This document shows, piece by piece, positions 176 to 62,372 of a stretch of 64,000 nucleotides of DNA. The position numbers and the translations under genes were made by a program. Positions within the stretch are counted from its first letter, which is position 1. The number at the start of each line of letters is the position of its first letter. The stretch spans positions 4,712,001 through 4,776,000 of the forward strand of contig NC_087472.1 in the NCBI RefSeq assembly GCF_036321535.1. The letters run 5' to 3'. Source of the DNA: Camelus dromedarius. Its lineage: Eukaryota. The notes under the pieces are model-generated. The model saw nothing but the letters and a program-made list of their open reading frames with translations, did not search any database and was not told the origin of the DNA.

Positions 176-1999
176 TAACACACGGTATGAACAACGCTAG
201 GTGAACAACAAAACGTGAGGACACCCGAGGGGAAGACTGCTGACTGGGGAGCTGACTCGTCCGTTGCGGGGTGGGGGTGGGGGGCAGCAGGGAGTGGGGG
301 AGGGGCTGTGGGCCGCACAGACGCAGAGGGCAGGACAGGTAGGAGAGAAGATCTCCCGCTTCTGAGCGGTTTCGTGCCTACAGCTGGGGCAGGGCCCCGG
401 ACACACATGCCTCAGCCCTGGGGCTCTACCAGGACAGCAAGAAAGATGGGTCAGTTGAGGCATTTCCCTCCTGAGTCTCTGCTAATACCCACCTGACATC
501 AAACCTGCGTGAGGACTGGCCTGTGCAAAACACATCACTTAAACAGAACGTAAGGGAGAGACGGACAATAAGGTGGCGGTACCAGAGCACCTCACACGTG
601 GTTATAGCAGGCACACTTTTGCGCCTTGGGTATGTATACCGTCTGCACGTACATACGAGCCCTCGTAAGATATAAACACGCACCCAGATACACGCGCTAG
701 TACGTACACAGGTGGTGCGTGGATGTACGTGTACATAAGCACACACAGCCCGCACACGTGTCATACATACACGCACAGTAGGTGCAGATGAGAAATGTAG
801 TTCTTACTATGCATGAGAATTAACAAGTGAAAGTCACGGCTCTGGAACAGGTACTATTACCTAGTCATCAACGCAAGGGATCCGCAACTCCCCTGCCACT
901 GCTCAGCCTCTTCAGGAAAAGGTAAGTCTTTCGAACAGACCGTCTCCGAAGTCAGGCTGGCTGGCGAGGAGCCCCCGAGGGAAGGTGTGTTGCTCTCTGC
1001 CCCTTCACGGTCACCAGGAGGCAGGTCCCCTCCAGCATCTTTGCTGGGACTGCAGCCTTTGTGTGCCAGGGTGGCTGAGGACCTTCCTGGATGAGGACAA
1101 AGGGGTCCAACCACCCCGCAACAGAGGGACCCTAAGAACGCAAATCGGCCCCGCGCGGGAATCCTGGGGGCCCCCGGACGGGGCTGTCAGGCTGAGCAGT
1201 CCCCGGCCCCCACCTCCTCAGCGAACTCGGGGGGTCAGAGGCTAGGTCTGAGAGACGCAGTCTCAGGAGGGCAGAGGGTGGCTCCCAGATCCTGTCAGGA
1301 GTCCAGGTGAGGACACAGGAGCCTGAGGACCCCAGGGAATCCACCTCCGGCACCCCCACCCGCCCCCGACAGCCCTGGGAGACTCCAGGGCACTGGGTCC
1401 GGATGTCACGTGCACTGATGCCCCACCCTTGCGAGGTGAGAGAGGTGAGCGCCTGGGTGAGGGAGGCCGGCTTCAGGTCTGCACTGGGAAGGAGCCCAGC
1501 GCTGCCAGGAGTCAAGGTAAAACCGTGTGAGGGGACTTGGGGGGCGGGGGCAGGCATCCAGGTCGGTTTTGCGGTCACCCCTGGGAGACCCCAGGCAGGG
1601 TTGCGAGGATCAGATCCCCACCCCCTCATCCCCACTCCCCTCTCGGGGGTCCTGCCTGGGGAGGGTCTGAGTACAATGGGATCAAACTCAGGTGGGCAGA
1701 GGGAGGGGCCCAGGCCCAGCCTGGAGCCCAGGTGGGGAGCAGAGGGAGGGCTGCGGGATCCCCGGGGAATCCATCTCAGCCCCTGGCGTCCACAGTCCTG
1801 GGAAGCCCTGGGCCTGGTGGCCTGATGTGCGTCCACAGACTCCCCTGGGGGTGTCAGGGCAGTGAGGGCCTTGGTGTGAGGGTGTGGGCTCGGGTCAACA
1901 AGGGGGCGTCCCAGGACCCGCCAGGGCTGAAGCTGAGGACGCTGAGGGAGGACAGAAGGAGCCCCACAGATCCCCGCCCCTGCTGTCAGCCCTGGGAGG

Positions 2000-3790
2000 G
2001 CCTGGGTGGGATGAGCACTCGTGGGGTCCTGACTTCCTGACATCCGGGTCTCGGAGGGACTGGGGTCCTGGGATGAGGGGCGGGGCCTCGGGTGGTCCAA
2101 GGGGAGGCCAGTGCTGCCTGAGTGAAAGTGAGGACCCTGAGGGAGAACAGGGGATCCCGCACCCCGGGACAGTGTTGGTCCTTGGAGACCTTAGGGCAGG
2201 GTGACCAGCGGCGGCATTTCCTGACATCCGGGTCTCACAGGGTCTGGGGTCCTGGGATGAGGGGTGGGGCTTCGAGGGTTCCAAGGGGAGGCTACATACC
2301 GCCTGAGTCAAAGTGAGGACCCCGAGGGAGAACGGATGGATCCTGCACCCCGGGACAGTGTTGGACCTTGGAGGCCTTGGGGCAGGGTGACCACCGGTGG
2401 CATTTCCTGACATCCGGGTCTCAGAGGGACTGGGGTCCTGATATGACGGGCGGGGCCTCGGGTTGCCAGAAGGTAGACCACATGCTGCCTGAGTCAAAGT
2501 GAGGACCCTGAGGGAGGAAGGAAGGGCCCCGGAACCCAGAAAACAGACCATCCACAGACAGGGAACCTTACTATCAGCTGCCCGGAGGCCCGAGGGCAGG
2601 ACAGGCCCACGTGTCGTGTCATGACTGCGGCACCCTGGTCTCAGAGAGACCGGGGACTTTGTGTGAGATGGGGGGACCCTCAGATATTCAGAGGAGAGAA
2701 TCCGATGTCCCACTGGGAGTGAAGGTGACGACTGCGAGCGAGCAGTGAGGGACCCTGGACCCTAAAACATAATGAGTCCTGGGAAGCCATAGGTCGGAAT
2801 AACCAGAGGCGGCATTTCCTGACATCCGGGTCTCACAGGGACTGGGGTCCTGGGATGAGGGGCGGGGCCACGGGTGGGCAGAGGGGAGACGACATGCCGC
2901 CTGAGTGACGACGCTGAGGGAGAACTGAGGGGACCCGGGACCCAGAAGATAGGCCACCCCACAGAAAGGCGCCCTTGCTATCAGCTGTCCGGAGGCCCGA
3001 GGGGAGGACAGGCCCACGAGGTTTGTCCTGACTTCCGCATCGGGGTCTCAGAGAGACTGGGGACATAGTGAAAGGGAGGCGGGGATCTCAGGGAGGCGGG
3101 GATCTCAGGTCTGCGGAGGCGAGAATCTCAGGTCCCCCTGGGAGTGAAGGTGACGACTGCGAGCGAGCAGTGAGGGAACCTGGACCCTAAAACATAATGA
3201 GTCCTGGGAAGCCATAGGTCGGAATAACCAGAGGCGGCATTTCCTGACATCCGGGTCTCACAGGGACTGGGGACATAGAGAAAGGGAGGCGGGGGGCTCA
3301 GGTCTGCGGAGGAGAGAATCTCAGGGCCGCCTGGGAGTGAAGGTGACGACCGCGAGTTAGCACTCAGGGACCCTGCACCCCAGAAGAGAGTCAGTCCTGG
3401 GAGGCCATAGGGCGGGAGGACCTCAGGCAGCAGTTCCTGAAATGCGGGTCTCAGAGGGACTGGCGTCCTGGTATGACGGGCGGGGCCTCAGGTGGGCTGA
3501 GAGGGGAATCTCAACTCCTGCCAAGAGTCAAGGTGAGGACCCCGAGGGAGGAGTGAGGGGACCCGAGACCCCAGAACAGGGGGACGCAACCGATCCTGCC
3601 CCTGCTGGCAGCCCTGGGGGGCCCCCAGGCAGGATGAGCACACGTGGTGTGTCCTGACTTCCGCATCCAGGTCTCAGAGAGACCTCGGACTGATTATAAG
3701 GAGGGCCCCTCAGGTGGTTGGAGAGCCGAATCCCAGGTCCCGCTTGGAGTCACGGTGAGGACCCTGAGCTAGCGCGGAGAGGACCTCCCG
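2000..3790 (+). promoter_or_regulatory. Tandem array of ~9 promoter/first-exon cassettes upstream of MAGE G1
   Basis: Cores TTCCTGACATCCGGG or CTGACTTCCGCATC near 2030, 2215, 2400, 2620, 2815, 3030, 3238, 3430 and 3655. Most are followed by GGGGCGGGGC and a gagtcaag|gtgagg-type donor. Confidence 0.75.
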
Positions 3791-5630: not shown

Positions 5631-5636
5631 AATAAA
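5631..5636 (+). terminator. Candidate poly(A) signal AATAAA for G1 (G4 copy at 40029-40034)
   Basis: AATAAA in the AT-rich 3'UTR about 480 nt after the stop codon. Confidence 0.55.
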
Positions 5637-10728: not shown

Positions 10729-10979
10729 AGGCTGTGTTCAAGACGTAAACATTGAACATTATAAAAATACTTCCATGTGTAAATCCCTGTGTTAACAAAT
10801 CCGCAGAGAAAAAAAGTTTTGATCAGGTCAACGGAGACAGAAAAGCCTTTGAAAGATATTCAGCACAAGTTCATGGTAGGAACTTTAGCAAGGTAAGATT
10901 GGAAGGTAAATTTCCTTTCCTACAGTTGGCAGCAAGCATACAGAAATGTGAAATGTTAGAAGCATTCTTGTCATGAACA

Positions 10980-11440
10980 GGTCCTAAAAAGATGTGATCA
11001 CCTCCGATTTCTGAAGCTGCCCTGAAACGGAAAGCCAGAGCTATGGATATCAAAATAAATAAGAAATACATATATTGAAAAGAAAGAATGAATGTTCCTC
11101 GTCACAACATGATGACGTATCTAAGCAGATTCAAAGGAATGGGCCCATGGAAGAGTCAAATGAATATGAGGTTTCAGAGGAATAGTGGATGGAAGATCAC
11201 CACAGCAAAACCAAGAGCCTTGCCATACAAAAGCAATGACTATTTAGAACATGTAACAGAAAAATACCTCAATTTATAACTGCAATAAAAGTTAAATGTT
11301 ACCTAAAAAGAAGCCTAACAAATATGTATACAAGGTCTTGACGGAGGCGTTATACAAGTTTCCTGGTAGATTCAGGCTGAAGAGCTCCCCAAAAGAGCAG
11401 TATGCCATATCCACTGATGGGGAATAAACTATTGTGACCG
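10980..11440 (+). mobile_element. Degenerate L1M ORF2 fragment
   Basis: A-rich sequence with weak L1 ORF2-like text. Confidence 0.5.
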
Positions 11441-11618
11441 TATCAATTCCCCTTTTTCTTTTCTTTCTCTTTCTCTCTTTCTTTTCTTTTTTCTGTCTTT
11501 TTCCCCCCACAGATTTAGTGCTATAAGTTTATCTGCCAAGATGACAGTCAATCTTGAGATTTTGTCTTCCGTTTCCAAAATCAACCCCGGAAAAAATTAC
11601 ACGGGAGAATGAAATTAA

Positions 11619-11692
11619 GTGTGTGTGTGTGTGTGTGTGTGTGTGTCTGTGTGTGTCTGTGTGTGTGTGTGTGTGTGTGTGTCTGTGTGTGT
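11619..11692. repeat. Interrupted (TG)n microsatellite; identical inverted copy at 61409-61482
   Basis: Direct read of the sequence. Confidence 0.95.
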
Positions 11693-12799
11693 TGGATAAA
11701 AGCAGATGGCAGGATGGGTAAGAGGAAAAGTTTAAACTTCTACCCTTGTTTCACTGTGAAAATTGGGAGAGAGCTCAGCATCTCTGGCCACAGAGGCCAG
11801 AAGCCATGGGGAAATATCAGGGCAGTGTGAAGGATGGGATGATTAAGGGCAGCGGAATTTGTGCTAATAACCACCTGAAATCACCTTAGTGGATGAGGCC
11901 TGTCCTTTTCAAAATTGACCATTTAAATAGCAGAGGAAGTCTGGACAAGAAACAAGAGTATGGAGCATCGGAGTGAATCAGGCAGCCTAAGAGTGGCTAT
12001 GCTTTCCGGAAACTTGGTGAGATGTAAAATGTATTTCTGACTCTGAATGAGGCTTCAGAGAATGAAAATCAGTGCTCTGAACTATGAAATGTTAGATAAC
12101 CTCGAAAGAGCAGGACGTCCCCAAGTCCGGCTGCTCAGCCGCTGCCTTTTAGAGGGAAACGTTTCCGCAGTCTGGCTGGCTGGTGCTTCTTCTCTGACCC
12201 TCCGCGGCGGTCAGGGGCGCTGCAGCTCCCCACCCAGCATGGAGTCTAGGACTCAGAGTCATTTTCTGCAAGGGGTGCATCTGAGACACAAGCTCAGAGC
12301 TGACAGGGAGGGAGCCGGCCCAACCAGCATTTCATCAAGGACCCAGGAGCCAAGTTAGGAACTTCAGGAGCGAGTAATGGGGAGGGGCATCTTCCCCAGG
12401 GGGTCCGAGGAATCCAGCCTGGACCTGATTTCAGCCCTGGGAGACCCCGAGGCATGGCGTCTGGATGTGATGTGCCCTGACTTCTGCCTGGGAGGTCTGA
12501 GAAAGGTACGGGCCTGGGTCTGGGAGGAGGCTCCAGACTGGCACAGAGGAAGCCCAGCCCTACAGGGAGTCAAGGTAGGGGCCTGAGGGAGGACGAAGGC
12601 CCCACAGGATCCGTCTCCGCCCTAGGGGATCCTGGCCAGGCTTCTCGGGGGACTAGGAGGAGGAGGGCCTGGTTCTCAGGGAAGGCAATTCAAGTGGGCA
12701 GAGGGAGGGCCCAGGGCCTGATAGGACCCAAGGTGAGCATGCAGATGGAGAAATGAGGGCGTGGGGTGGGGTGACCCAGAGAAACCTGCCCTGCTGAAA

Positions 12800-15400
12800 G
12801 CCCTAGGAGGCACATGGCAGCGAGCCCTGACTTCCGCATCCGGGTCTCAGAGGGAGGGGGGACTTAATTTAGAGAGGGGGACCTCAAGGGGGCAGAGCGG
12901 AGACTCGCAAGTCCTGCCAGGAGTCAAGGTGAGCACTCTGAGGGAGGACTGCGGTGACCCTGGACCCCAGAACAGAGTCTGTCCTGGGAGGCCATAGGGT
13001 GGAATGACCACAGGCACATTTCCTGACGTCCGGGCTCTCAGAGGCACTGGGGACCTGGTATGAGGGGCGGGGCCTCAGGTGGGCAGAGGAGAGACTACAA
13101 GCCACCGGAGTCAAAGTGAGGACCCCGAGGGAGGACGGAGAGGACCCAGAACCCCCGAAAAGAGGCCATCCCACAGAAAGGAGCCCCTGCTCTCAGCCAT
13201 CCAGAGTCCCGAGGGCAGGACAGGCCCACGTGGTGTGTCCTGACTGCGGCACCCTGGTCTCAGAGAGACCGGGGACTTAGTGTAAGTTCGGGGAGGGGGG
13301 GGCTCAGAGAGGGAGAATCCCAGTTTCCGCCTGGCGTCAAGGTGAGGACCCAGAGGGAGGACTGCGGTGACCCTGGACCCCAGAACAGAGTCGGTCCCGG
13401 GAGGTCGTAGAGCGGGATCACCTCGGGCAGCGTTTCCTCACATCCGGGTCCGCGTCTCAGAGCGAGCGGGGACCTGGTATGAGGGGCGGGGCCTCGGGTG
13501 CGCTGAGGGCAGAAACCCAGTTCCTGGCGGGAGTCACAATGAGGAACCTCAGGGAGGACTGCCGAGACCCTGGACACCGGAAGAGAGGGGACCCCACGAT
13601 TTCTACCTCGGCAGGCCCCGGGTGGACGAGCACATGGCAGCGTGCCGGGACTTCCGCATCCGGGCCTCGGAGGGACTGGGGCGCTGGTATGGGGGGCGAA
13701 GCCTCAGGTCGGGAATGCGGAGCTGAGGGCCTGTCAGGACAGTAAGCAAGGACTGTGAGGGAGGACTGCGGGACCCTGGACCCCAGAACAGAGTCGGTCC
13801 TGGAAGGTCATAGGGCGGGATCACCCCAGGCCGCATTTCCTGACATCAGGGTCTCGGAGAGACTGGGGTCCTGGTTTGAGGGGCGGGGCCTCAGGTGGGC
13901 CGAGGTGAGAATCCCAGTTCCTGCCGGGCATCAAAGTGGGGACCCGGAGGGAGGACTGAGGGGACCCTGGACCCCACAACGGAGTCTGTCCTGGGAGGCA
14001 GTAGGGTGGAATGACCACAGTCGCATTTCCCTGAACATCCCGTACTCAGAGAGACTGGGGACCTGTATGAGGGGCGGGGCCTCAAGTGGGCTGAGCGGGG
14101 AATCCCGGTTCCTGGCGGGAGTCACAGTGAGGACCCTGAGGGAGGACCGAGGCCCAGGACTCCAGAAGAGAGGGGACCCCAAGATATCTACCCCATCAGT
14201 CAGCCCTTGGAGGCCCCGGGCGGACGAGCACATGGCAGCGTGCCCTGACTTCCACAACTGGGCCTCAGAGGGACTGGGGACTGGGGACTGGGGCGCTGGT
14301 ACGAGGAGCGAAGCCTCAGGTCGGAAATGCGAAGCTGAGGACCTGTCAGGACAGAACGCGAGGACTGTGAGGGAGGACTGCGGTAACCTTGGACCCTAGA
14401 ACAGAGTCGGTCCTGGGACGTCATAGGTCGGGATCACCTTTGGCAGCATTTCTTGACATCCAGGCTTCAGAGAAACTGGACCAGATTTCAGGGGCGGGGC
14501 CTCAGGTGAGCTGAGGGGGGAATCCCAGTTCCTGCCGAGAGTCAAGGTGAGGACGCGGAGGGAGGACTCAGGGGACCCTGGATCCCAGAAAAGAGTCAGT
14601 CCTGGGAGGTCATAGGGCAGGATGACCACAGGTGACATTTCCTGACATCCCAGTCTCTTAGAGAGTAGGGTCCTGGTATGAGGGGCGGGGCCTGCAGTGG
14701 GCAGAGGGGAGACTACATGCCGCCTGACTCAAATTGAGGTCCCTGAGGGAAGAGGGAGGGGACCCAAGACCCCAGAAAAGAGGCCATTCCACATAAATGT
14801 GCCCCTGCTGTCAGCCGTCTTGAGGGCCCAGGGCGGGATGAGCCCAATCGGAGTGTCCTGACTTCCGCAACTCGGTCAGAGAGACTCGGGACATAGTGTA
14901 AGGGGGGGTGGGGGAGGTCCTAGGTCTGTGGAAAAGAGAATCTGAGGTGCCAGTGGGAGTGAAGGAGACGACCGCGAGGGAGCACTGAGGGACCCTGGAC
15001 CCCAGAACAGAGTCAGTCCTGGGAGGCCATAGGGCGGGATGACCTCAGGCAGCAGTTCCTGAAATGCGGGTCACAGAGGGACTGGCGTCCTGGTATGACG
15101 GGCGGGGCCTCAGGTGGGCTGAGAGGGGAATCCCAGGTCCTGCCAGGAGTCAAGGTGAGGACCCGAGGGAGGAGTAAGGGGACCCGAGACCCCAGAACAG
15201 AGGGGATGCAACTGATCCTGCCCCTGCTGTCAGCCCTGGGAGGCCCCCAGGCAGGATGAACACACATGGTGTGTCCTGACTTACGCATCCAGGGCTGAGA
15301 GAGGCCGGGGACTTGCTATAAGGAGCGGCCCTCAGGTCCTTGGAGAGCAGAATCCCAGGTCCCGCTTGGAGTCCCGGTGAGGACCCTGAGCTAGCGCGGA
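12800..15400 (+). promoter_or_regulatory. Tandem array of ~13 promoter/first-exon cassettes upstream of MAGE G2
   Basis: Cores near 12830, 13017, 13240, 13430, 13648, 13835, 14025, 14248, 14447, 14636, 14857, 15053 and 15277. GC boxes and donors such as 13116, 14127 and 15155; several donors are mutated. Confidence 0.75.
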
Positions 15401-15751
15401 GAGGACCTCCCGTGCTAGAAGAGTGGGAACCTGCCAGAGCCCAGGCCTCCTGCCACCACGCGGGTCCAGGGCTGTGCCACCGTGTAGACCCGAGGTCTCC
15501 CCTCCTTTCTCTCCCAGTGGCTCCAGACACCGGGAGGTGAAGGCCTAGGTCTGAGACACGTGTCCTCGGGTCACAGAGCACAGGAGGCCGGCAGTGCCGG
15601 GTGAGGTGTGGGCCCTGAGTGTGTACCCGGGGGCTCCCGGAACAGAGGGGACCCTACAAGGCCAACATCCACTTCACACACCCCCTGTCGCCCCCAGAAC
15701 CTCAGGCTATGCCGGCTGCACCCTGAGGAGTTGCCTCACTTCCCCCGTCAG

Positions 15752-15820
15752 GTTCACAGGCAACCGTCCACCAGGAGGAGAGCCCCTGTGAGGCCGAGGG
15801 CACCCCTGAAGAGGAGACCA
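15752..15820 (+). other. 69-nt non-coding exon of MAGE G2 (intron 15821-15894)
   Basis: cccgtcag|gttcac...gagacca|gtaagt, next acceptor ttccccag|gcccgt. Confidence 0.8.
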
Positions 15821-15955
15821 GTAAGTCGCCTTTGTCAGAGCCCCTCAGGGTGGGTTTCTCAGCCCGAGCCACCGGCATTCCCTTTCTTCCCCAGGCCCGT
15901 GGGTCCCCATCTGTCATCCCTGCCTCCACTCCTGTCGGCGCGGACACCAGTCGTC

Positions 15956-16939
15956 ATGACTGGGGTTCAGATGAGTGACCTCCACCAGACTGAAGCCGAC
16001 TTTCAGGACCCAAGAGAGGCTGAGGATGTGGTGGTTGCGCAGCAGATTGGGGCTGAGGAGGTGGCGGATGCATCCCCCATGTCTCCCTCCTCCTCCTCCT
16101 CCGTCCTGTTCCTGGACACCCTGGAGGAGGTGGATGATTCTGGGACACCCAGTGCCCCGCAGAGCCCACGGGGTGTCTGCTCCTTCCCCACTGCTGACGA
16201 TGCCGCCCCTCCATGGAGCCAGTCGGAAGACAGCACCTCCAGCAGCCAAGATGAGGAGAGGCCCAGCACCGGCCAGGACCCCGCAGATGCCGAGTCCTCA
16301 CACCCAGACCCACTCCATTTGAAGGTGGCTGAACTGGTGAGCTTCCTGCTCCTCAAGTACCGCTCAAAGGAGCCGACCACAAAGGAAGACATGCTGAATG
16401 CGGTCCTCAGAGATGACCAGGACCACTTCCCTGCGGTCTTGAACCAAGCCTCTGAGTGTGTGCAGCTGGCCTTTGGGGTGGATGTGAAGGAGGTGGACCC
16501 CAGGGAGCACTCGTATGTCCTGGTCCCCACCCTGGGCCTCACCTGTGACGGGATGCTGGGCGATGGGCAGAGCATGCCCAAGAACGGCCTCCTGGTGATG
16601 CTCCTGGGTGTGATCCTCCTGGAGGGAGAGTGCGCCACTGAGGAGAAGATGTGGGAAGCACTGAGTGTCATGGGGGTGTATCCCGGGAGGGAGCACTGCA
16701 TCAACGGGGAGCCCAGGGAGCTCGTCACCAACGTGTGGGTGCGGGAGGGGTACGTGGAGTACCGGCAGGTGCCCAACAGCGATCCCCCTCTCTACGAGCT
16801 CCTGTGGGGGCCACGGGCCCACGCGGAGACCAGCAAGCTGCAAGTCCTGGAACATTTCCTCAGGATCAATAGAAGGGGTCCCAGTTCTTTCCCGTCCCTG
16901 TCTGAAGAGCGAGTGAGTGATGAGGAAGAGGGGGCCTGA
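15956..16939 (+). CDS. MAGE-A-like protein G2 (327 aa, full MAGE_N region plus MAGE homology domain)
   Basis: gtcATGa at the canonical position 61 nt into the last exon. Has LKVAELVSFLLLKY...ELLWGPRAHAETSK. Confidence 0.95.
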   Translation: MTGVQMSDLHQTEADFQDPREAEDVVVAQQIGAEEVADASPMSPSSSSSVLFLDTLEEVDDSGTPSAPQSPRGVCSFPTADDAAPPWSQSEDSTSSSQDEERPSTGQDPADAESSHPDPLHLKVAELVSFLLLKYRSKEPTTKEDMLNAVLRDDQDHFPAVLNQASECVQLAFGVDVKEVDPREHSYVLVPTLGLTCDGMLGDGQSMPKNGLLVMLLGVILLEGECATEEKMWEALSVMGVYPGREHCINGEPRELVTNVWVREGYVEYRQVPNSDPPLYELLWGPRAHAETSKLQVLEHFLRINRRGPSSFPSLSEERVSDEEEGA

Positions 16940-27930: not shown

Positions 27931-29149
27931 CATTTACACAACATCCACCCCCAGCTCCCCCCGAAAAACCCAGAAGCACTGGCAGCGGGGATCGGCCCCT
28001 CTGCCCTGGGCGGAGGTGCCCTCAGTGCCTGGAGGCCATGCATCTTGACTCCCGCCAGGGCCTGCTCTTCCCCCCTGCCCCCACCTGGGATGATGAGTTG
28101 ACATCTGCCCTTCAGACCCAGACCTCAACTCCCTGAAGACTCCCACCTTCCCACCCAGGATGGAAGTGAGCACGGCACTTAGGGCCACCACTGACTGTTC
28201 CTTCCAGGGCTGGGAACAGGGGTCAGCTGGAGCCGGTGGGGTCCTTCCTCTCCTGAGATGGCGGGGTACATTTGGTCCTCATGAAGAGTCCTTGCCTTGA
28301 CACGTGGGATATCCTAGGACTCCTCCCTCTGCTGGCCTGATGTTTCCCCTCAGACCAAGGTCCTCACACCCTGAGATACCCCACCCCCAACCACGTGACG
28401 GAAGTGATGGCAGGCCCCATCCGGCCAGACCTGACCGGGGACTCCTAGGGCTGAAACAGCTCAAGCCGGACACTGTAAGTTCCCATCTCTTTTGGGGTGA
28501 GGGTCTCCTCACGCCCTGCATCCACCCAAAGGGTCCTTCTCCTGAGTCCTGGCACATCCTGTGAGTCCTTCTGCTGCTGACCGGTTGTGGCTCCTTCTGC
28601 CAACCTCAGAACTAGGTCTGAATTCCCTGAGAGCCTGGGGCAGAGGTGAGGGGGCAGCACCACTGGCCACTCCTGCCCAGGGACTTCAGGGATGACAGGG
28701 GGCAGGGCCGGATTCTGTGGGCTCACTCTCTACTCTCAGTATCAAGATATTCACATTTACTCCCAGCAAGTCCTGGAACCCTCCCCTCAGCTAACATGAG
28801 GTTGTCCCCTGCAGGCCGACACCACCATCGCACTGAGTTTGAGGATAAAGTGGGGAGGTGATGCCTCCTGACTCACACCCGGGCCTCCCAGGAAGGAGCA
28901 GAGGAGCAAGTTTCTGTTGAGGCCCCCTCTACCTGGGGAGGGGGTCTGCCCAGTCCTACTGGGGGTTCCGGGGAGACCACCCTCTGCACATCTGAGCCAC
29001 ACTCCTCAGACCAGGGACTTCACCTCCCAAGGACCTCTGAGTTAAGAGGTCAGAAAGCATCTCACCTGGTCGCCCTGCTCTGGGGCCTCCAAGACCCAGC
29101 ACAAGGGCAAAGGCTCCCTCACGGTCCTCACATTGCCTCCTGGTAATTT

Positions 29150-30900
29150 AGGATTCTGTCCTCTGCCCATCTGACGCCCCGCCCCCTCATACCAGGATCC
29201 CTGTCCCCTCTGAGACCGCGATGTCAGGAAATGCTGCCTTTGGCCATCCTGCCCTATAGCCCCCCATGGCCGACTCTGTTCCGGGGTGCAGGGTCTCTTA
29301 GTCCTCCCTCAGGGTCCTCACCTTGACTACCGGGGGGACCGGACCGGGGATACCCTCCTCTGCATACCTGAGGTCCCCCTCCTTATATTAAGGCCCCAGT
29401 CTCTCTGAGACCCGGATGGGGAAGTCGAGACACCAACGTGTGCTCATCTCGCCCTGGGGCCTCCCAGGGAGAAAAGCAGGGGCAGGATCGGTTCGGCGGG
29501 TCCCCACTGATCTGGGGTCTCTGGTCCCCTCAGTCCTCCCTCAGGATCCTCACCGTGGCGCCAGGCAGGAACGGGGATTCCCACCTCAGCCCATCTGAGG
29601 CCCCGCCCCTCAAACCTGGTCCCCAGTCCCTCTGAGACGCGGATGTCAGGAAATGTGCCTGTGGTCATGCCACCCTATGATCTCCCAGGACCGACTCTGT
29701 ACTGGGGTCCAGGGTCCCGCAGTCCTCCCTCACAGTCCTTGCTTACTGTCCTGACAGGCCCTCAGCCCCGCGTTTCCCAACCTGAGGCTTCGCTCCCCAC
29801 ACCAGCGCCCCAGTCCCTCCGAGGCCCGGACGCGGAAGTCCCGGCACGCTGCCATGGGCTCGTCCGGCCTGAGGCCTCCGAGGGCTGCCTGCCGGGGTAC
29901 ATATCTTGGGGTCCCCTCGATTCTGGAGTCCAGGGTGTCCCCAGTCCTCCCTCAGGGCCCTCGCCTTGACGCCCGGCAGGAACCGGGATTCTCTCCTCAG
30001 CGCACCCGAGGCCCCGCCCCTCAAACCAGGACCCCAGTCCCTCTGAGACCCGGATGTCAGGAAATGCTGCCTGAGGTGATGCCGCCCCATGACCTCCTGG
30101 GACCCACTGTGTTCTGGGGTCTCTGGCCCCCTCAGTCCTCCCCCAGGGTCCTCACCTTGACGCCCGGCAGGAACTGGGATTCTCTCCTCAGCCCACCCGA
30201 GGCCCCGCCCCTCAAACCAGGACCCCAGTCCCTCCGAGACCCGGATGTCAGGAAATGCTGCCTGAGGTGATGCCGCCCTATCACGTCCCAGGACCGACTG
30301 TGTTTTCGGGTCCAGGGTCCCTCACTGCTGGCTCGCGGTCGTCACCTTCACTCCCAGTGGGACCTGGGATTCTCTCCTCTGCAGATCTGAGGGTTCCCCC
30401 CCCCATCACACACTAAGTGCCAGGTCTCTCTGAGACCAGGATGCCGCGGTCATGACACGACACGTGGGCCTGTCCTGCCCTCGGGCCTCCGGACAGCAGC
30501 TAGCAAGGGCCCCTTTGTGTTGGATGACCACTTTTCCGAGTTCGGGGTCCCCTCAGTTCTCCCTCAGGGTCGTCACTTAGGCGTCATGTCGTCTAGCCTC
30601 TGGCCACCCGAGGACCCACCCCTCATCCCAGGACCCCAGTCCCTCAGAGACCCGGATGTCAGGAAATGCCGCCAGTGGTCACCTTGCCCTATGGTCTCCA
30701 AGGTGCAACGCTGTCCCGGGTGCAGGATCCCTCCGTTCTCCCTCGGGGTCCTCACCTTGACTCAGGCGGCATGTGGTCTCCCCTCTGGCCACCCGAGGCC
30801 CCGCCCCTCATCACAGGACCTCAGTCCCTCCGAGACCCGGATGTCAGGAAGTCAGGACCCCACGAGTGCTCATCCCACCCAGGCCCTCCCAGGGCTGACA
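29150..30900 (-). promoter_or_regulatory. Tandem array of ~9 promoter/first-exon cassettes upstream of MAGE G3
   Basis: Reverse-complement cores (ggatgtcaggaaatg / ggatgcggaagtc) near 29220, 29415, 29641, 29830, 30052, 30241, 30440, 30652 and 30838, with cctcaccttgac donors. Confidence 0.72.
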
Positions 30901-32160
30901 GCAGGGGCGGGGATCTGTGGGGCCCCTTCGGTCCTCCCTCAGCGTCCTCAGCTTGAGCCCCGGCAGGTCCTGGGACGCCCCCTTGTTGACCCGAGCCCAC
31001 ACCCTCACACCAAGGCCCTTACTGCCCTGAGACCCCCAGGGGAGCCTCTGGACTCACATCAGGCCACCAGGCCCAGGGCTTCCCAGGACTGTGGACGCCA
31101 GGGGCCGAGATGGATTCCATGGGTTCCCTCAGCCCTCCCTCTGCTCCTCACCTGGGCTCCCGGCTGGGCCTGGGTGCCTCCCTCTGCCCACCTGAGCTTG
31201 GTCCCCTTGGACTCGGACCCTCCAGAGCCAGGACACCAGAGAGGGAAGCGGGGATGAGGGGGTGGGGATCTGATCCTTGCAACCCTGCCTTGGGTCTCCC
31301 AGGGGTGACCGCAGAACCGACCTGGATGCCTGCAAACCGAGTCCCCACACACGGTTCTACCTTGACTCCTGGCAACGCTGGGCTCCTTCCCTCTGCAAAC
31401 CTGAAGCCGGCCTCCCTCACCCAGGCCCTCACCTCTCTCACCTCCCAAGGGTGGGGCATCAGTGCCCGTCACATCTGGACCCTGAGCCCAGGGGTTTCCG
31501 AGGGCTGTCGGGGGGGGCCGGAGGTGGATTCCCTGCGGGCCTCAGTCTCCTGTGTCCTCACCTTGACTCCTGACAGGAGCTGGATTCGCCCTCTGCCCTC
31601 CTGAGACTGCGTCTCTCAGACCTAGCCTCTGACTCCCCGAGTTCGCTGAGGAAGTGGGGGCCGGGGACTGCTCAGCCTGACAGCCCCGTCCGGGGGCCCC
31701 CAGGATTCCCGCACGGGGCCGATTTGCATTCTTTGGGTCCCTGTGTTGTCGGGTGGTTGGACCCCTCTGTCCTTACCCTGGAGGGCCCTCACCCACCCTC
31801 GCACACAAAGGCTGCAGTCCCAGCAAAGATGCTGGAGGGGACCTGCCTCCTGGTGACCGTGAAGGGGCAGAGAGCAACACAGCTTCCCTCGGCGACTCGC
31901 TGACAACCAGCCTGACCTCGGGGACGGTCTGTTCGAAAGACTTACCTTTTCCTGAAGAGGCTGAGCAGTGGCAGGGGAGCTGCGGATCCCTTGCGTTGAT
32001 GACTAGATAATAGTACCTGTTTCAGAGCCGTGATTTTCAGTTGTCACTTCTCATGCATGGTAAGAACTACATTTTTCATCTGCACCTACTGTACGTGTAT
32101 GTGTATCACATGTCTAGACTGTATGTGCTTATGTACACGTACATCCACGCACCACACACA
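30250..32160 (-). repeat. Older inverted homology to the G4 upstream region (~35122-37030) and the G1 upstream region (~710-2615)
   Basis: Paired ORFs have coordinate sums 67282 (G4) and 32867 (G1), with many substitutions. Confidence 0.88.
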
Positions 32161-34590: not shown

Positions 34591-36414
34591 TAACACACGG
34601 TATGAACAACGCTAGGTGAACAACAAAACGTGAGGACACCCGAGGGGAAGACTGCTGACTGGGGAGCTGACTCGTCCGTTGCGGGGTGGGGGTGGGGGGC
34701 AGCAGGGAGTGGGGGAGGGGCTGTGGGCCGCACAGACGCAGAGGGCAGGACAGGTAGGAGAGAAGATCTCCCGCTTCTGAGCGGTTTCGTGCCTACAGCT
34801 GGGGCAGGGCCCCGGACACACATGCCTCAGCCCTGGGGCTCTACCAGGACAGCAAGAAAGATGGGTCAGTTGAGGCATTTCCCTCCTGAGTCTCTGCTAA
34901 TACCCACCTGACATCAAACCTGCGTGAGGACTGGCCTGTGCAAAACACATCACTTAAACAGAACGTAAGGGAGAGACGGACAATAAGGTGGCGGTACCAG
35001 AGCACCTCACACGTGGTTATAGCAGGCACACTTTTGCGCCTTGGGTATGTATACCGTCTGCACGTACATACGAGCCCTCGTAAGATATAAACACGCACCC
35101 AGATACACGCGCTAGTACGTACACGGGTGGTGCGTGGATGTACGTGTACATAAGCACACACAGCCCGCACACGTGTCATACATACACGCACAGTAGGTGC
35201 AGATGAGAAATGTAGTTCTTACTATGCATGAGAATTAACAAGTGAAAGTCACGGCTCTGGAACAGGTACTATTACCTAGTCATCAACGCAAGGGATCCGC
35301 AACTCCCCTGCCACTGCTCAGCCTCTTCAGGAAAAGGTAAGTCTTTCGAACAGACCGTCTCCGAAGTCAGGCTGGCTGGCGAGGAGCCCCCGAGGGAAGG
35401 TGTGTTGCTCTCTGCCCCTTCACGGTCACCAGGAGGCAGGTCCCCTCCAGCATCTTTGCTGGGACTGCAGCCTTTGTGTGCCAGGGTGGCTGAGGACCTT
35501 CCTGGATGAGGACAAAGGGGTCCAACCACCCCGCAACAGAGGGACCCTAAGAACGCAAATCGGCCCCGCGCGGGAATCCTGGGGGCCCCCGGACGGGGCT
35601 GTCAGGCTGAGCAGTCCCCGGCCCCCACCTCCTCAGGGAACTCGGGGGGTCAGAGGCTAGGTCTGAGAGACGCAGTCTCAGGAGGGCAGAGGGTGGCTCC
35701 CAGATCCTGTCAGGAGTCCAGGTGAGGACACAGGAGCCTGAGGACCCCAGGGAATCCACCTCCGGCACCCCCACCCGCCCCCGACAGCCCTGGGAGACTC
35801 CAGGGCACTGGGTCCGGATGTCACGTGCACTGATGCCCCACCCTTGCGAGGTGAGAGAGGTGAGCGCCTGGGTGAGGGAGGCCGGCTTCAGGTCTGCACT
35901 GGGAAGGAGCCCAGCGCTGCCAGGAGTCAAGGTAAAACCGTGTGAGGGGACTTGGGGGGCGGGGGCAGGCATCCAGGTCGGTTTTGCGGTCACCCCTGGG
36001 AGACCCCAGGCAGGGTTGCGAGGATCAGATCCCCACCCCCTCATCCCCACTCCCCTCTCGGGGGTCCTGCCTGGGGAGGGTCTGAGTACAATGGGATCAA
36101 ACTCAGGTGGGCAGAGGGAGGGGCCCAGGCCCAGCCTGGAGCCCAGGTGGGGAGCAGAGGGAGGGCTGCGGGATCCCCGGGGAATCCATCTCAGCCCCTG
36201 GCGTCCACAGTCCTGGGAAGCCCTGGGCCTGGTGGCCTGATGTGCGTCCACAGACTCCCCTGGGGGTGTCAGGGCAGTGAGGGCCTTGGTGTGAGGGTGT
36301 GGGCTCGGGTCAACAAGGGGGCGTCCCAGGACCCGCCAGGGCTGAAGCTGAGGACGCTGAGGGAGGACAGAAGGAGCCCCACAGATCCCCGCCCCTGCTG
36401 TCAGCCCTGGGAGG

Positions 36415-38190
36415 GCCTGGGTGGGATGAGCACTCGTGGGGTCCTGACTTCCTGACATCCGGGTCTCGGAGGGACTGGGGTCCTGGGATGAGGGGCGGGG
36501 CCTCGGGTGGTCCAAGGGGAGGCCAGTGCTGCCTGAGTGAAAGTGAGGACCCTGAGGGAGAACAGGGGATCCCGCACCCCGGGACAGTGTTGGTCCTTGG
36601 AGACCTTAGGGCAGGGTGACCAGCGGCGGCATTTCCTGACATCCGGGTCTCACAGGGTCTGGGGTCCTGGGATGAGGGGTGGGGCTTCGAGGGTTCCAAG
36701 GGGAGGCTACATACCGCCTGAGTCAAAGTGAGGACCCCGAGGGAGAACGGATGGATCCTGCACCCCGGGACAGTGTTGGACCTTGGAGGCCTTGGGGCAG
36801 GGTGACCACCGGTGGCATTTCCTGACATCCGGGTCTCAGAGGGACTGGGGTCCTGATATGACGGGCGGGGCCTCGGGTTGCCAGAAGGTAGACCACATGC
36901 TGCCTGAGTCAAAGTGAGGACCCTGAGGGAGGAAGGAAGGGCCCCGGAACCCAGAAAACAGACCATCCACAGACAGGGAACCTTACTATCAGCTGCCCGG
37001 AGGCCCGAGGGCAGGACAGGCCCACGTGTCGTGTCATGACTGCGGCACCCTGGTCTCAGAGAGACCGGGGACTTTGTGTGAGATGGGGGGACCCTCAGAT
37101 ATTCAGAGGAGAGAATCCGATGTCCCACTGGGAGTGAAGGTGACGACTGCGAGCGAGCAGTGAGGGACCCTGGACCCTAAAACATAATGAGTCCTGGGAA
37201 GCCATAGGTCGGAATAACCAGAGGCGGCATTTCCTGACATCCGGGTCTCACAGGGACTGGGGTCCTGGGATGAGGGGCGGGGCCACGGGTGGGCAGAGGG
37301 GAGACGACATGCCGCCTGAGTGACGACGCTGAGGGAGAACTGAGGGGACCCGGGACCCAGAAGATAGGCCACCCCACAGAAAGGCGCCCTTGCTATCAGC
37401 TGTCCGGAGGCCCGAGGGGAGGACAGGCCCACGAGGTTTGTCCTGACTTCCGCATCGGGGTCTCAGAGAGACTGGGGACATAGTGAAAGGGAGGCGGGGA
37501 TCTCAGGTCTGCGGAGGCGAGAATCTCAGGTCCCCCTGGGAGTGAAGGTGACGACTGCGAGCGAGCAGTGAGGGACCCTGGACCCTAAAACATAATGAGT
37601 CCTGGGAAGCCATAGGTCGGAATAACCAGAGGCGGCATTTCCTGACATCCGGGTCTCACAGGGACTGGGGACATAGAGAAAGGGAGGCGGGGGGCTCAGG
37701 TCTGCGGAGGAGAGAATCTCAGGGCCGCCTGGGAGTGAAGGTGACGACCGCGAGTTAGCACTCAGGGACCCTGCACCCCAGAAGAGAGTCAGTCCTGGGA
37801 GGCCATAGGGCGGGAGGACCTCAGGCAGCAGTTCCTGAAATGCGGGTCTCAGAGGGACTGGCGTCCTGGTATGACGGGCGGGGCCTCAGGTGGGCTGAGA
37901 GGGGAATCTCAACTCCTGCCAAGAGTCAAGGTGAGGACCCCGAGGGAGGAGTGAGGGGACCCGAGACCCCAGAACAGGGGGACGCAACCGATCCTGCCCC
38001 TGCTGGCAGCCCTGGGAGGCCCCCAGGCAGGATGAGCACACGTGGTGTGTCCTGACTTCCGCATCCAGGTCTCAGAGAGACCTCGGACTGATTATAAGGA
38101 GGGCCCCTCAGGTGGTTGGAGAGCCGAATCCCAGGTCCCGCTTGGAGTCACGGTGAGGACCCTGAGCTAGCGCGGAGAGGACCTCCCGTG
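36415..38190 (+). promoter_or_regulatory. Array of ~9 promoter/first-exon cassettes upstream of G4
   Basis: Duplicate of the G1 array. Confidence 0.75.
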
Positions 38191-58313: not shown

Positions 58314-60301
58314 TCCGCGCTAGCTCAGGGTCCTCACCGTGACTCCAAGCGGGACCTGGGATTCGGCTCTCCAACCACCTGAGGGGCCCTCCTTATAATC
58401 AGTCCGAGGTCTCTCTGAGACCTGGATGCGGAAGTCAGGACACACCACGTGTGCTCATCCTGCCTGGGGGCCTCCCAGGGCTGACAGCAGGGGCAGGATC
58501 AGTTGCATCCCCTCTGTTCTGGGGTCTCGGGTCCCCTTACTCCTCCCTCGGGTCCTCACCTTGACTCCTGGCAGGACCTGGGATTCCCCTCTCAGCCCAC
58601 CTGAGGCCCCGCCCGTCATACCAGGACGCCAGTCCCTCTGTGACCCGCATTTCAGGAACTGCTGCCTGAGGTCATCCCGCCCTATGGCCTCCCAGGACTG
58701 ACTCTGTTCTGGGGTCCAGGGTCCCTCAGTGCTCCCTCGCGGTCGTCTCCTTCACTCCCACTGGCACCTCAGATTCTCTTTTCCACAGACCTAGGACCTC
58801 CCCCACCCCCCCTTACACTATGTCCCGAGTCTCTCTGACCGAGTTGCGGAAGTCAGGACACTCCGATTGGGCTCATCCCGCCCTGGGCCCTCAAGACGGC
58901 TGACAGCAGGGGCACATTTATGTGGAATGGCCTCTTTTCTGGGGTCTTGGGTCCCCTCCCTCTTCCCTCAGGGACCTCAATTTGAGTCAGGCGGCATGTA
59001 GTCTCCCCTCTGCCCACTGCAGGCCCCGCCCCTCATACCAGGACCCTACTCTCTAAGAGACTGGGATGTCAGGAAATGTCACCTGTGGTCATCCTGCCCT
59101 ATGACCTCCCAGGACTGACTCTTTTCTGGGGTCCAGGGTCCCCTGAGTCCTCCCTCCGCGTCCTCACCTTGACTCTCGGCAGGAACTGGGATTCCCCCCT
59201 CAGCTCACCTGAGGCCCCGCCCCTGAAATCTGGTCCAGTTTCTCTGAAGCCTGGATGTCAAGAAATGCTGCCAAAGGTGATCCCGCCCTATGACCTTCCA
59301 GGACCGACTCTGTTCTGGGGTCCAGGGTCCCGCAGTCCTCCCTCACAGTCCTTGCTTACTGTCCTGACAGGCCCTCAGCTCCGCATTCCCGACCTGAGGC
59401 TTCGCCCCCCATACCAGCGCCCCAGTCCCTCCGAGGCCCGGATGCGGAAGTCCCGGCACGCTGCCATGTGCTCGTCCACCCGGGGCCTGCCGAGGTAGAA
59501 ATCGTGGGGTCCCCTCTCTTCCGGTGTCCAGGGTCTCGGCAGTCCTCCCTGAGGTTCCTCATTGTGACTCCCGCCAGGAACTGGGTTTCTGCCCTCAGCG
59601 CACCCGAGGCCCCGCCCCTCATACCAGGTCCCCGCTCGCTCTGAGACGCGGACCCGGATGTGAGGAAACGCTGCCCGAGGTGATCCCGCTCTACGACCTC
59701 CCGGGACCGACTCTGTTCTGGGGTCCAGGGTCACCGCAGTCCTCCCTCTGGGTCCTCACCTTGACGCCAGGCGGAAACTGGGATTCTCCCTCTCTGAGCC
59801 CCCCCCTCCCCGAACTTACACTAAGTCCCCGGTCTCTCTGAGACCAGGGTGCCGCAGTCAGGACACACCACGTGGGCCTGTCCTGCCCTCGGGACTCTGG
59901 ATGGCTGAGAGCAGGGGCTCCTTTCTGTGGGATGGCCTCTTTTCGGGGGTTCTGGGTCCTCTCCGTCCTCCCTCGGGGTCCTCACTTTGACTCCGGTGGC
60001 TTGTAGTCTCTCCTCTGCCCACCTGAGGCCCCGCCCCTCATACCAGGTCCCCAGTGCCTCTGAGAGCCCGGACGTCAGGAAATGTGCCTGTGGTCATTCC
60101 ACCCTATGGCCTCCCAGGACAGACTCTGTTCTGGGGTCCAGGGTCACCGCAGTCCTCCCTCAGAGTGCTCACCTTGACTCCTGGCAGGACTTGCGAGTCT
60201 CCGCTCTGCCCCCTTGAGGTCCCCCTCTCTAAATTAAGTCCCCCCTCCCTCTGAGACCCGGATGCGGAAGTCAGGGCTCGCTGCCATGTGCCTCCTAGGG
60301 C
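58314..60301 (-). promoter_or_regulatory. Array of ~10 promoter/first-exon cassettes upstream of G5
   Basis: Inverted copy of the G2 array lacking three units. Confidence 0.75.
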
Positions 60302-62372
60302 TTTCAGCAGGGCAGGTTTCTCTGGGTCACCCCACCCCACGCCCTCATTTCTCCATCTGCATGCTCACCTTGGGTCCTATCAGGCCCTGGGCCCTCCCTC
60401 TGCCCACTTGAATTGCCTTCCCTGAGAACCAGGCCCTCCTCCTCCTAGTCCCCCGAGAAGCCTGGCCAGGATCCCCTAGGGCGGAGACGGATCCTGTGGG
60501 GCCTTCGTCCTCCCTCAGGCCCCTACCTTGACTCCCTGTAGGGCTGGGCTTCCTCTGTGCCAGTCTGGAGCCTCCTCCCAGACCCAGGCCCGTACCTTTC
60601 TCAGACCTCCCAGGCAGAAGTCAGGGCACATCACATCCAGACGCCATGCCTCGGGGTCTCCCAGGGCTGAAATCAGGTCCAGGCTGGATTCCTCGGACCC
60701 CCTGGGGAAGATGCCCCTCCCCATTACTCGCTCCTGAAGTTCCTAACTTGGCTCCTGGGTCCTTGATGAAATGCTGGTTGGGCCGGCTCCCTCCCTGTCA
60801 GCTCTGAGCTTGTGTCTCAGATGCACCCCTTGCAGAAAATGACTCTGAGTCCTAGACTCCATGCTGGGTGGGGAGCTGCAGCGCCCCTGACCGCCGCGGA
60901 GGGTCAGAGAAGAAGCACCAGCCAGCCAGACTGCGGAAACGTTTCCCTCTAAAAGGCAGCGGCTGAGCAGCCGGACTTGGGGACGTCCTGCTCTTTCGAG
61001 GTTATCTAACATTTCATAGTTCAGAGCACTGATTTTCATTCTCTGAAGCCTCATTCAGAGTCAGAAATACATTTTACATCTCACCAAGTTTCCGGAAAGC
61101 ATAGCCACTCTTAGGCTGCCTGATTCACTCCGATGCTCCATACTCTTGTTTCTTGTCCAGACTTCCTCTGCTATTTAAATGGTCAATTTTGAAAAGGACA
61201 GGCCTCATCCACTAAGGTGATTTCAGGTGGTTATTAGCACAAATTCCGCTGCCCTTAATCATCCCATCCTTCACACTGCCCTGATATTTCCCCATGGCTT
61301 CTGGCCTCTGTGGCCAGAGATGCTGAGCTCTCTCCCAATTTTCACAGTGAAACAAGGGTAGAAGTTTAAACTTTTCCTCTTACCCATCCTGCCATCTGCT
61401 TTTATCCAACACACACAGACACACACACACACACACACACACAGACACACACAGACACACACACACACACACACACACACACTTAATTTCATTCTCCCGT
61501 GTAATTTTTTCCGGGGTTGATTTTGGAAACGGAAGACAAAATCTCAAGATTGACTGTCATCTTGGCAGATAAACTTATAGCACTAAATCTGTGGGGGGAA
61601 AAAGACAGAAAAAAGAAAAGAAAGAGAGAAAGAGAAAGAAAAGAAAAAGGGGAATTGATACGGTCACAATAGTTTATTCCCCATCAGTGGATATGGCATA
61701 CTGCTCTTTTGGGGAGCTCTTCAGCCTGAATCTACCAGGAAACTTGTATAACGCCTCCGTCAAGACCTTGTATACATATTTGTTAGGCTTCTTTTTAGGT
61801 AACATTTAACTTTTATTGCAGTTATAAATTGAGGTATTTTTCTGTTACATGTTCTAAATAGTCATTGCTTTTGTATGGCAAGGCTCTTGGTTTTGCTGTG
61901 GTGATCTTCCATCCACTATTCCTCTGAAACCTCATATTCATTTGACTCTTCCATGGGCCCATTCCTTTGAATCTGCTTAGATACGTCATCATGTTGTGAC
62001 GAGGAACATTCATTCTTTCTTTTCAATATATGTATTTCTTATTTATTTTGATATCCATAGCTCTGGCTTTCCGTTTCAGGGCAGCTTCAGAAATCGGAGG
62101 TGATCACATCTTTTTAGGACCTGTTCATGACAAGAATGCTTCTAACATTTCACATTTCTGTATGCTTGCTGCCAACTGTAGGAAAGGAAATTTACCTTCC
62201 AATCTTACCTTGCTAAAGTTCCTACCATGAACTTGTGCTGAATATCTTTCAAAGGCTTTTCTGTCTCCGTTGACCTGATCAAAACTTTTTTTCTCTGCGG
62301 ATTTGTTAACACAGGGATTTACACATGGAAGTATTTTTATAATGTTCAATGTTTACGTCTTGAACACAGCCT

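What the first reader, a model, noticed from the sequence alone, without database searches (positions are those of the whole stretch)
12800..15400. Higher-order arrays of ~200-bp promoter/first-exon cassettes drive every MAGE gene (about 50 cassettes in the window)
Seen: each unit has an Ets-like core, often containing a CpG, usually a GGGGCGGGGC box, and a donor like gagtcaag|gtgagg. Two unit types alternate; G2 reads B-A-B-A-B-A-A-B-A-A-B-A-B. Some donors are dead (gagtcacaatgagg, gactcaaattgagg, gagtgaaggagacg). Established: human MAGEA promoters use methylation-sensitive Ets sites, and MAGEA4 has several duplicated alternative first exons. Inference: here the module behaves like a satellite with dimer and trimer repeats, a promoter accordion in which unit number, methylation and donor integrity set expression. 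This is the best candidate for an undescribed system in the window.
Basis: partly seen in the sequence, partly recalled or inferred. Interest (0 to 1): 0.75.

Follow-up and report, generated by a model that had tools for sequence, protein, structure and literature searches.

The report
Tandem MAGE promoter/first-exon cassette arrays
Each of the five camel MAGE-A genes in this window has 9-13 old, head-to-tail copies of a ~190/225-base promoter-plus-short-first-exon module in front of it, an arrangement like the one already described for human MAGEA4, not a new kind of system.

Summary
Profile searches find 50 well-kept units (9+13+9+9+10) and about 22 decayed relics. They form five arrays, each just upstream of one of the window's five MAGE-A reading frames and in the same orientation. 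The G2 order B-A-B-A-B-A-A-B-A-A-B-A-B and the three quoted dead donors are exact.

Only about 31 units are independent, because G4 copies G1 and the G5 array copies G2 minus 613 bases. In type A units the GC box and the Ets-like core depart from consensus 3-4 times less often than the rest of the unit. The exon body varies most. The exact GGGGCGGGGC box occurs only in type A. Half of the type B units carry a TATA-like box instead.

Units group across arrays, not within them, so the arrays predate the gene duplications and are not homogenised like a satellite.

RNA contigs from reproductive-tissue runs show two different array donors joined to a previously unnoted exon (15518-15600), which then joins 15752. 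One of these donors lies inside unit 9, after at least 450 bases of read-through. Start sites, methylation and any copy-number effect remain untested.

Verdict: a new member of the known MAGEA4-type alternative-promoter arrangement. A first-reader note (s1-184559) reports a similar cassette repeat elsewhere in this genome.

The parts
12763..15387 (+). G2 array: 13 well-kept units. Starts are 12763 B, 12941 A, 13128 B, 13354 A, 13551 B, 13758 A, 13948 A, 14140 B, 14370 A, 14559 A, 14746 B, 14977 A, 15166 B.
   Evidence: nhmmer with type A and type B profiles, 125-190 bits each; alignment
12410..12739 (+). Two degenerate relic units at the distal edge of the G2 array
   Evidence: 36.6 and 10.5 bits; donor-like remnant visible at about 12568
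14490..14507 (+). GC box of unit 9, directly followed by an internal donor (exon end 14505, GT at 14506-14507). This is the donor seen spliced to exon 2a in RNA.
   Evidence: Joint 14506>15519 in X3, and the same loose end in X2 and X6; donor score 11.2, the highest of all GC-box-adjacent sites
15166..15387 (+). Proximal cassette (unit 13, type B-gamma): TATAAGG at 15317-15323, donor with exon end 15376. Its Ets core is mutated (TTAC in place of TTCC).
   Evidence: a paralogous proximal-type donor joined to exon 2a in X2 (20-base side only)
15518..15600 (+). The acceptor AG is at 15516-15517 and the donor GT at 15601-15602.
   Evidence: Joints into 15519 and from 15597/8 to 15749/50, and depth 150-200 in three RNA runs; 100% conserved in G1, G4 and G5
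15752..15820 (+).
   Evidence: Joint from exon 2a in X2 and X6. The 3' end and the next acceptor (exon 3 from 15895) are read from the sequence only.
15956..16939 (+). G2 MAGE-A reading frame (327 aa)
   Evidence: Pfam MAGE_N and MAGE; closest solved relatives are MAGE-A11, A4 and A3
13816..14428 (+). 613-base block (part of unit 6, units 7 and 8, part of unit 9 = A-A-B) that is absent from the otherwise identical G5 arm; flanked by the 10-base microhomology CGGGATCACC
1945..3765 (+). G1 array, 9 units (A A A B A B A A B), with 4 relics upstream (1093-1942)
29121..30939 (-). G3 array, 9 units (A A B A A B A B A in gene orientation). Relics lie on both sides (30941-31773 and 28044-29107). G3 has no exon 2a or 2b homologue.
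36360..38163 (+). G4 array, 9 units; a 99.6% copy of the G1 array
58327..60338 (-). G5 array, 10 units (B A B A B A A B A B). It is identical to the G2 array except for the 613-base block and a proximal cassette of G1 type.

Best explanation
These are old tandem duplications of the MAGE-A core promoter together with its short non-coding first exon and splice donor. Each unit runs, in order: start of the intron; a pair of Ets-like sites, usually with a CpG; about 25 bases of spacer; a GC box (type A) or a TATA-like box (half of type B); about 40 bases of exon; and a donor. The arrays were already in place before the five genes duplicated and have been inherited unit by unit. Several units probably remain able to bind Ets- and Sp1-type factors and to start transcription in germ cells. 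Transcripts that start upstream read through downstream units until they meet a usable donor, which can be the canonical one or a second donor just after the next GC box. They then splice to a shared exon 2a (15518-15600), then to 15752, then to the coding exon, so every isoform encodes the same protein.

Shown here: the anatomy, the motif conservation, the age of the arrays, and two array donors joined to exon 2a.

Inferred: which units fire, silencing by methylation, and any effect of unit number on output.
For: The arrays sit upstream of, and in the same orientation as, all five MAGE-A frames. In the 19 type A units the two most conserved 12-mers are the GC box and TTCCTGACATCC (0.956 against a mean of 0.838), and the exon body is the least conserved (0.62). 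Departures from consensus are 5.3% in the GC box and 4.4% in the Ets block against 17% elsewhere (Fisher p 1e-6 and 2e-8), and the same holds in each of the three independent arrays. Distal units are as intact as proximal ones. Strongly supported tree branches join units of different arrays (A1u9+A2u13, A1u8+A2u12, A1u1+A3u1, A1u4+A3u3, A2u5+A3u6). RNA contigs from reproductive-system runs (X2 and X3 of one study, plus X6 of another, whose tissue is not given) join 14505 and a proximal-type donor to exon 2a, and exon 2a to 15752, at canonical GT-AG sites once paralogue differences are allowed for. Published background: methylation of CpGs in the MAGE-A1 promoter blocks Ets-1 and Sp1 binding (PMC4230356); 'Alternative promoters of gene MAGE4a' (citation seen).
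Against: No transcription start was mapped. Contig ends fall at repeats and say nothing about starts. Array depth is only 2-16, against 130-500 on the exons, and much of it is unspliced, so it could be pre-mRNA or contaminating DNA. The spliced contigs do not match any copy in this window exactly: their exon 2a is 5 bases shorter, so they come from another copy, individual or species. The donor heptamer is no better conserved than average (12% against 16%, p 0.23), and 7 of 31 canonical donors are dead or weak. The conservation statistics treat related units as independent.
Confidence: 0.65

Rival explanations
1. Only the proximal one or two cassettes are the working promoter. The upstream units are decaying relics of old duplications, and the RNA signal over them is background read-through with occasional cryptic splicing.
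For: Array depth is 10-50 times lower than exon depth. Seven of 31 donors are dead or weak. Decayed relics at the array edges show that units do erode. The segment from the proximal cassette to exon 2b is 97-100% conserved among G1, G2 and G5, better than anything upstream.
Against: The GC box and Ets block are kept 3-4 times better than the flanking columns, in distal units too and in all three independent arrays, even though they contain mutable CpGs. G2's own proximal cassette has a mutated Ets core. In G3 the well-kept units are the distal ones and the decayed ones are proximal. A donor about 1 kb upstream is spliced to exon 2a in three libraries from two studies.
Confidence: 0.2
2. The arrays work mainly as a cluster of transcription-factor binding sites, that is an enhancer or a platform for methylation or CTCFL sensing, that boosts one promoter. 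They do not work as separate first exons.
For: Constraint falls on the factor-binding motifs, not on the donor or the exon body.
Against: Donors are still present at the homologous position in 24 of 31 units. Spliced products from within the array exist. The human precedent is alternative promoters.
Confidence: 0.1
3. It is a satellite-like, copy-number-tuned 'promoter accordion' in which unit number is actively turned over and sets expression.
For: Otherwise identical palindrome arms differ by one in-register A-A-B block. B units are never adjacent in the well-kept arrays. TRF finds a 408-base A-B dimer period in the G4 array, at positions that correspond to the G1 array.
Against: There is no homogenisation. 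Units are 15-30% diverged and cluster across arrays. No lag gives higher identity. Only one copy-number event is seen, and it could be an assembly error in a repeat.
Confidence: 0.05

Closest known systems
Human MAGEA4 (MAGE4a) alternative promoters and first exons (De Plaen et al., Genomics 1997;40:305)
   Same: Several duplicated promoter-plus-non-coding-first-exon modules lie in tandem upstream of a type I MAGE-A gene. All splice to common downstream exons and leave the protein unchanged. They carry Ets and Sp1 type motifs.
   Different: Details of the human case (eight first exons over a few kb) come from my memory; the paper could not be read here. The camel arrays have 9-13 units abutting head to tail, sit on all five paralogues, have two or more unit lineages with GC-box or TATA-like cores, and show read-through to an internal donor. 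Sequence homology to the human units was not tested.
Human MAGE-A1 promoter (two Ets sites overlapping an Sp1 site, silenced by CpG methylation; PMC4230356)
   Same: Paired Ets-like cores with a CpG, plus a GC box, in a CpG-intermediate region (observed/expected CpG ratio 0.40-0.46).
   Different: The human promoter is a single copy. Factor binding and methylation were not tested here.
Drosophila hydra, a testis gene with nine tandem alternative first exons (PMC1904467)
   Same: Recurrent tandem duplication of exon 1 in a fast-evolving testis-expressed gene, with at least four copies used as starts.
   Different: It is an unrelated gene in an unrelated lineage; its duplications are young and associated with the DINE-1 transposon. 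It is an analogy only.
Higher-order satellite or VNTR arrays
   Same: Head-to-tail units, a patterned A/B order, and one in-register copy-number difference.
   Different: No homogenisation within an array, no multimer period with higher identity, and units older than the gene duplications.

Membership tests
MAGE-A tandem alternative promoter/first-exon modules (MAGEA4 type) | Lies directly 5' of a type I MAGE-A gene, in the same orientation | tested here: met
   Five of five genes
MAGE-A tandem alternative promoter/first-exon modules (MAGEA4 type) | Each unit carries promoter motifs (Ets-like sites, Sp1/GC box or another core element) | tested here: met
   TTCC in 26 of 31 units; a loose GC box in 18 of 19 type A units; a TATA-like box in 6 of 12 type B units. 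These motifs are the most conserved columns. This is motif presence only, not binding.
MAGE-A tandem alternative promoter/first-exon modules (MAGEA4 type) | Each unit ends in a splice donor after a short non-coding exon | tested here: met
   24 of 31 units have a canonical donor scoring 5 or more; 7 are dead or weak. No protein family is found in array reading frames.
MAGE-A tandem alternative promoter/first-exon modules (MAGEA4 type) | Several units are used as transcription starts and spliced to a common exon | tested here: inconclusive
   Two different array donors are joined to exon 2a in RNA contigs. No starts were mapped, and the contigs come from a near-identical copy, not exactly this one.
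MAGE-A tandem alternative promoter/first-exon modules (MAGEA4 type) | Sequence homology of the units to those of human or other mammalian MAGE-A genes | not tested
   No mammalian genome collection is on hand, and no human sequence was fetched or compared.
MAGE-A tandem alternative promoter/first-exon modules (MAGEA4 type) | Germline-restricted expression gated by methylation | not testable with these tools
   The only hint is that the best-labelled RNA runs holding the mRNA are 'reproductive system' libraries.
Satellite or higher-order repeat | Multimer copies are more alike than neighbouring monomers of the same type | tested here: not met
   A-to-A identity is about 70-85% at all lags. Only units 5 and 8 (87%) hint at one old trimer copy. 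No long self-alignments exist inside the arrays.
Satellite or higher-order repeat | Concerted evolution: units cluster by array | tested here: not met
   The tree needs 13 label changes against a shuffled mean of 14.8. Strongly supported branches join units from different arrays.
CpG-island promoter | Observed/expected CpG ratio above 0.6 | tested here: not met
   The ratio is 0.40-0.46 at 62-64% G+C over the arrays, which is intermediate CpG density.

The most novel reading that the evidence does not exclude
The arrays are a selectively maintained bank of promoters, with GC-box and TATA-like cores interleaved. Many units would fire in germ cells once demethylated. Read-through plus secondary donors would rescue units whose own donor has died. 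In-register exchange between A units would change unit number between gene copies and so tune output. That would make it a heritable, copy-number-adjustable promoter.
Probability: 0.15. Interest if true: 0.6.

Novelty: new member of a known kind. Interest (0 to 1): 0.4.

Why it matters
MAGE-A genes are the textbook cancer-testis genes, and their silencing depends on promoter methylation. A non-primate species in which every paralogue keeps 9-13 promoter modules, with the factor-binding sites under visible constraint for a long time, suggests that multiplicity of promoters is a conserved and selected feature of this family, not a peculiarity of human MAGEA4. It also gives a natural series (10 against 13 units on otherwise identical palindrome arms) for testing whether promoter copy number matters. 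The practical gain for annotation is an extra 5' exon (15518-15600) and the warning that first exons here can be long read-through exons that end at non-canonical donors.

Tried and rejected
- **Transcription starts from contig ends.** Rejected. Contigs of three runs break at the same repeat-bounded places (for example 14055/14065 and 13363), so they reflect assembly-graph branching.
- **Assigning the spliced contigs to a copy in the window.** The 26-base exon 2a variant of the transcripts has no match with up to 3 mismatches. The transcripts combine a G2-type array junction with a G5/G1-type base at 15518, so they come from another copy, individual or camelid.
- **The 'goes back 575' joint in X2.** It is a different unit arrangement or an assembly path through repeats, not a splice.
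- **Zero depth at 15842-16324.** Not interpreted, because the tool filters human-like records.
- **Higher-order repeat test by lag.** No signal.
- **Rfam over 12000-16000.** No match.
- **Pfam on four long reading frames inside arrays.** No match.
- **Literature.** The MAGE4a paper and one further look-up by a PMC number I recalled for a MAGE promoter-methylation paper are not held. Four searches for open descriptions of MAGE tandem first exons found nothing beyond the citation.
- **Not attempted.** No comparison with other mammals or with human sequence. The masked N runs (47178-47381, 48124-48257, 48782-48940) were left untouched. The donor matrix is an approximation from memory and serves for ranking only.

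Full report
**What is there**

The window is a camel X-linked MAGE cluster; the species comes from earlier scan notes. It holds exactly five MAGE reading frames with Pfam MAGE_N and MAGE domains:
- G1, 4211-5152 (+)
- G2, 15956-16939 (+)
- G3, 26698-25865 (-)
- G4, 38609-39550 (+)
- G5, 58106-56751 (-)

The G2 protein is closest to solved MAGE-A11, A4 and A3.

A search with one unit found 54 matches. Profile HMMs of the two unit types found 72. Fifty are well-kept units: 9 in front of G1, 13 for G2, 9 for G3, 9 for G4 and 10 for G5. About 22 are degenerate relics, mostly at the distal edges; in G3 some also lie between the array and the gene. Every array is directly upstream of a MAGE gene and in the same orientation.

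**How many units are independent**

- 1-6626 and 34416-41024 are a 99.6% direct duplicate, so G1 and G4 are near-copies.
- 9121-15259 is 100% identical to the inverted arm 64000-58455, apart from a 20-base and a 613-base indel. From 15260 onward identity drops to 92-98%.
- That leaves about 31 independent units.
- The 613 bases (13816-14428) run from mid unit 6 to mid unit 9, an A-A-B length. They are flanked by a 10-base microhomology, so this is an in-register exchange or slippage, or an assembly error in a repeat.

**Anatomy of a unit**

Type A units (about 188 bases) carry CATTTCCTGACATCCGG and TATGAGGGGCGGGGCC. Type B units (about 205-246 bases) have an extra insert of about 32 bases, a double core GACTTCCGCATCCGG, and in half the cases TATAAGG or a similar box where A has the GC box.

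Counts over the 31 independent units:

| Feature | Units |
|---|---|
| TTCC core | 26 of 31 |
| CpG in the Ets block | 28 of 31 |
| Exact GGGGCGGGGC box | 13 of 31 (all type A) |
| Canonical donor scoring 5 or more | 24 of 31 |

- The dead donors are in A2 units 4, 8, 10 and 11. A3 unit 5 has GC in place of GT. A1 unit 5 and A3 unit 2 are weak.
- The B-beta units (A2 unit 5 and A3 unit 6) keep a shifted GTAAGC donor.
- Many A units have a second donor-like site right after the GC box (CAG|GTGGGC). It is strongest in unit 9 (CAG|GTGAGC).
- 'B' is at least three lineages: alpha (units 3 and 11), beta (units 5 and 8) and gamma (the proximal unit 13). Beta nests among the A units in the tree.
- Array reading frames have no protein family and the region has no Rfam match.
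- The observed/expected CpG ratio is 0.40-0.46, which is intermediate and not a CpG island.

**Signs of constraint**

In the 19 type A units the two most conserved 12-mers are exactly the GC box and the Ets-like core (0.956 against a mean of 0.838). The presumed exon body is the least conserved (0.62).

Departures from consensus in type A units:

| Block | Departures | Rest of unit | Fisher p |
|---|---|---|---|
| GC box | 5.3% | 17% | 1e-6 |
| Ets block | 4.4% | 17% | 2e-8 |
| Donor heptamer | 12% | 16% | 0.23 |

- The low rate in the combined GC-box and Ets columns repeats in each of the three independent arrays.
- The donor is not better kept than average.
- The cells are not phylogenetically independent, so the p values are indicative only.
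- Distal units are as intact as proximal ones. G2's own proximal unit has a mutated Ets core.

**Age and mode of evolution**

Same-type units within an array are 70-85% identical at every lag. Their best matches are usually in other arrays:
- A1u8 with A2u12, 94%
- A1u1 with A3u1, 93%
- A1u9 with A2u13, 90%
- A2u5 with A3u6, 89%

A maximum-likelihood tree gives these pairs 99-100% support and shows no clustering by array. The arrays therefore existed before the genes duplicated and are not homogenised. This is not satellite behaviour. The A/B patterning (B units are never adjacent) fits old duplications of A-B and A-A-B blocks.

**Transcripts**

One reads call was allowed. All four runs laid are assembled contigs. 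X2 and X3 come from 'reproductive system' RNA libraries of one study. X6 comes from a second study whose tissue is not given. X1 comes from a third study and may be DNA.
- A contig contiguous over about 14055-14505 (end of unit 7, unit 8, two-thirds of unit 9) is joined to 15518/9. X3 shows this as a joint, and X2 and X6 show the same loose end.
- A proximal-type donor (…AGTCAAG) is joined to the same place in X2, but with only 20 bases on that side.
- 15597/8 is joined to 15749/50 in X2 and X6.
- Once paralogue differences seen in G5 and G1 (G at 15518) are allowed for, the joints at 14505 and out of exon 2a are canonical GT-AG, and the 20-base proximal-type joint fits GT-AG too.

It is conserved 100% in G1, G4 and G5 and is absent from G3. 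Array donors splice to it, not to 15752.

The donor used in unit 9 lies upstream of that unit's own expected start, so the transcript began further upstream. A likely start is unit 8, whose own donor is dead, or an earlier unit.

Limits of the RNA evidence:
- Depth is 130-500 on the exons and 2-16 on the array.
- Contigs cannot show starts.
- The transcripts' exon 2a is 5 bases shorter than any copy in the window, so they come from a near-identical copy, another animal or another camelid.
- I did not build a joined mRNA model.

**Comparison with what is known**

- Methylation-sensitive Ets and Sp1 sites are established for human MAGE-A1 (PMC4230356).
- 'Alternative promoters of gene MAGE4a' (De Plaen 1997) is cited. 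From memory, it describes eight duplicated promoter/first-exon modules; I could not read it.
- Drosophila hydra is an independent analogue (PMC1904467).
- MAGE-A palindromes with near-identical arms and a diverged coding stretch are known in humans (PMC3112145).
- A first-reader note in this scan reports a similar 186-base cassette repeat 2.5 Mb away in the same genome (s1-184559; not checked here).

**Verdict**

The most likely reading (0.65) is an inherited bank of alternative promoter/first-exon modules of the MAGEA4 kind, with read-through and secondary donors. The satellite or 'accordion' reading is not supported by the sequence. Copy-number and methylation effects are untested. It is a new member of a known kind; interest 0.4.

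Noticed in passing
window 9121-15259 vs 64000-58455, then 15260-17370 vs 58454-56320: The palindrome arms are 100% identical up to a point inside the proximal cassette. Beyond it identity falls to 92-98%, and the two MAGE proteins are only 89.5% identical. From that point on, G5's proximal cassette through exon 2a is of G1 type, which looks like a gene-conversion mosaic. The pattern resembles the diverged 5' coding stretch of human MAGE-A3/A6 on otherwise identical arms (PMC3112145).
   Followed up: partly
window about 58113 (G5 equivalent of 15601): In G5 the exon 2a donor GT reads TT. A donor shifted by one base (G|GTTGAG) remains possible.
   Followed up: no
window 26698-29120 (-): G3 has no homologue of exon 2a or 2b. 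Five decayed cassettes (28044-29107) and a partial A unit (26871-26981) lie between its well-kept array and the coding exon, so its 5' structure must differ from that of the other four genes.
   Followed up: partly
window 4320-4340 and 38718-38738: At the position of the G2 start codon, G1 and G4 read GTG rather than ATG, and their MAGE_N match is weak (E 5e-4). Their true start and coding status are unclear.
   Followed up: no
RNA contigs laid on 15519-15545: All spliced contigs carry an exon 2a that is 5 bases shorter (…CCGGGAAGGCC…) than every copy in the window. The expressed copy is therefore outside the window or from another animal or species.
   Followed up: partly
window 47178-47381, 48124-48257, 48782-48940: Three masked N runs lie in an AT-rich stretch between G4 and G5.
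   Followed up: no
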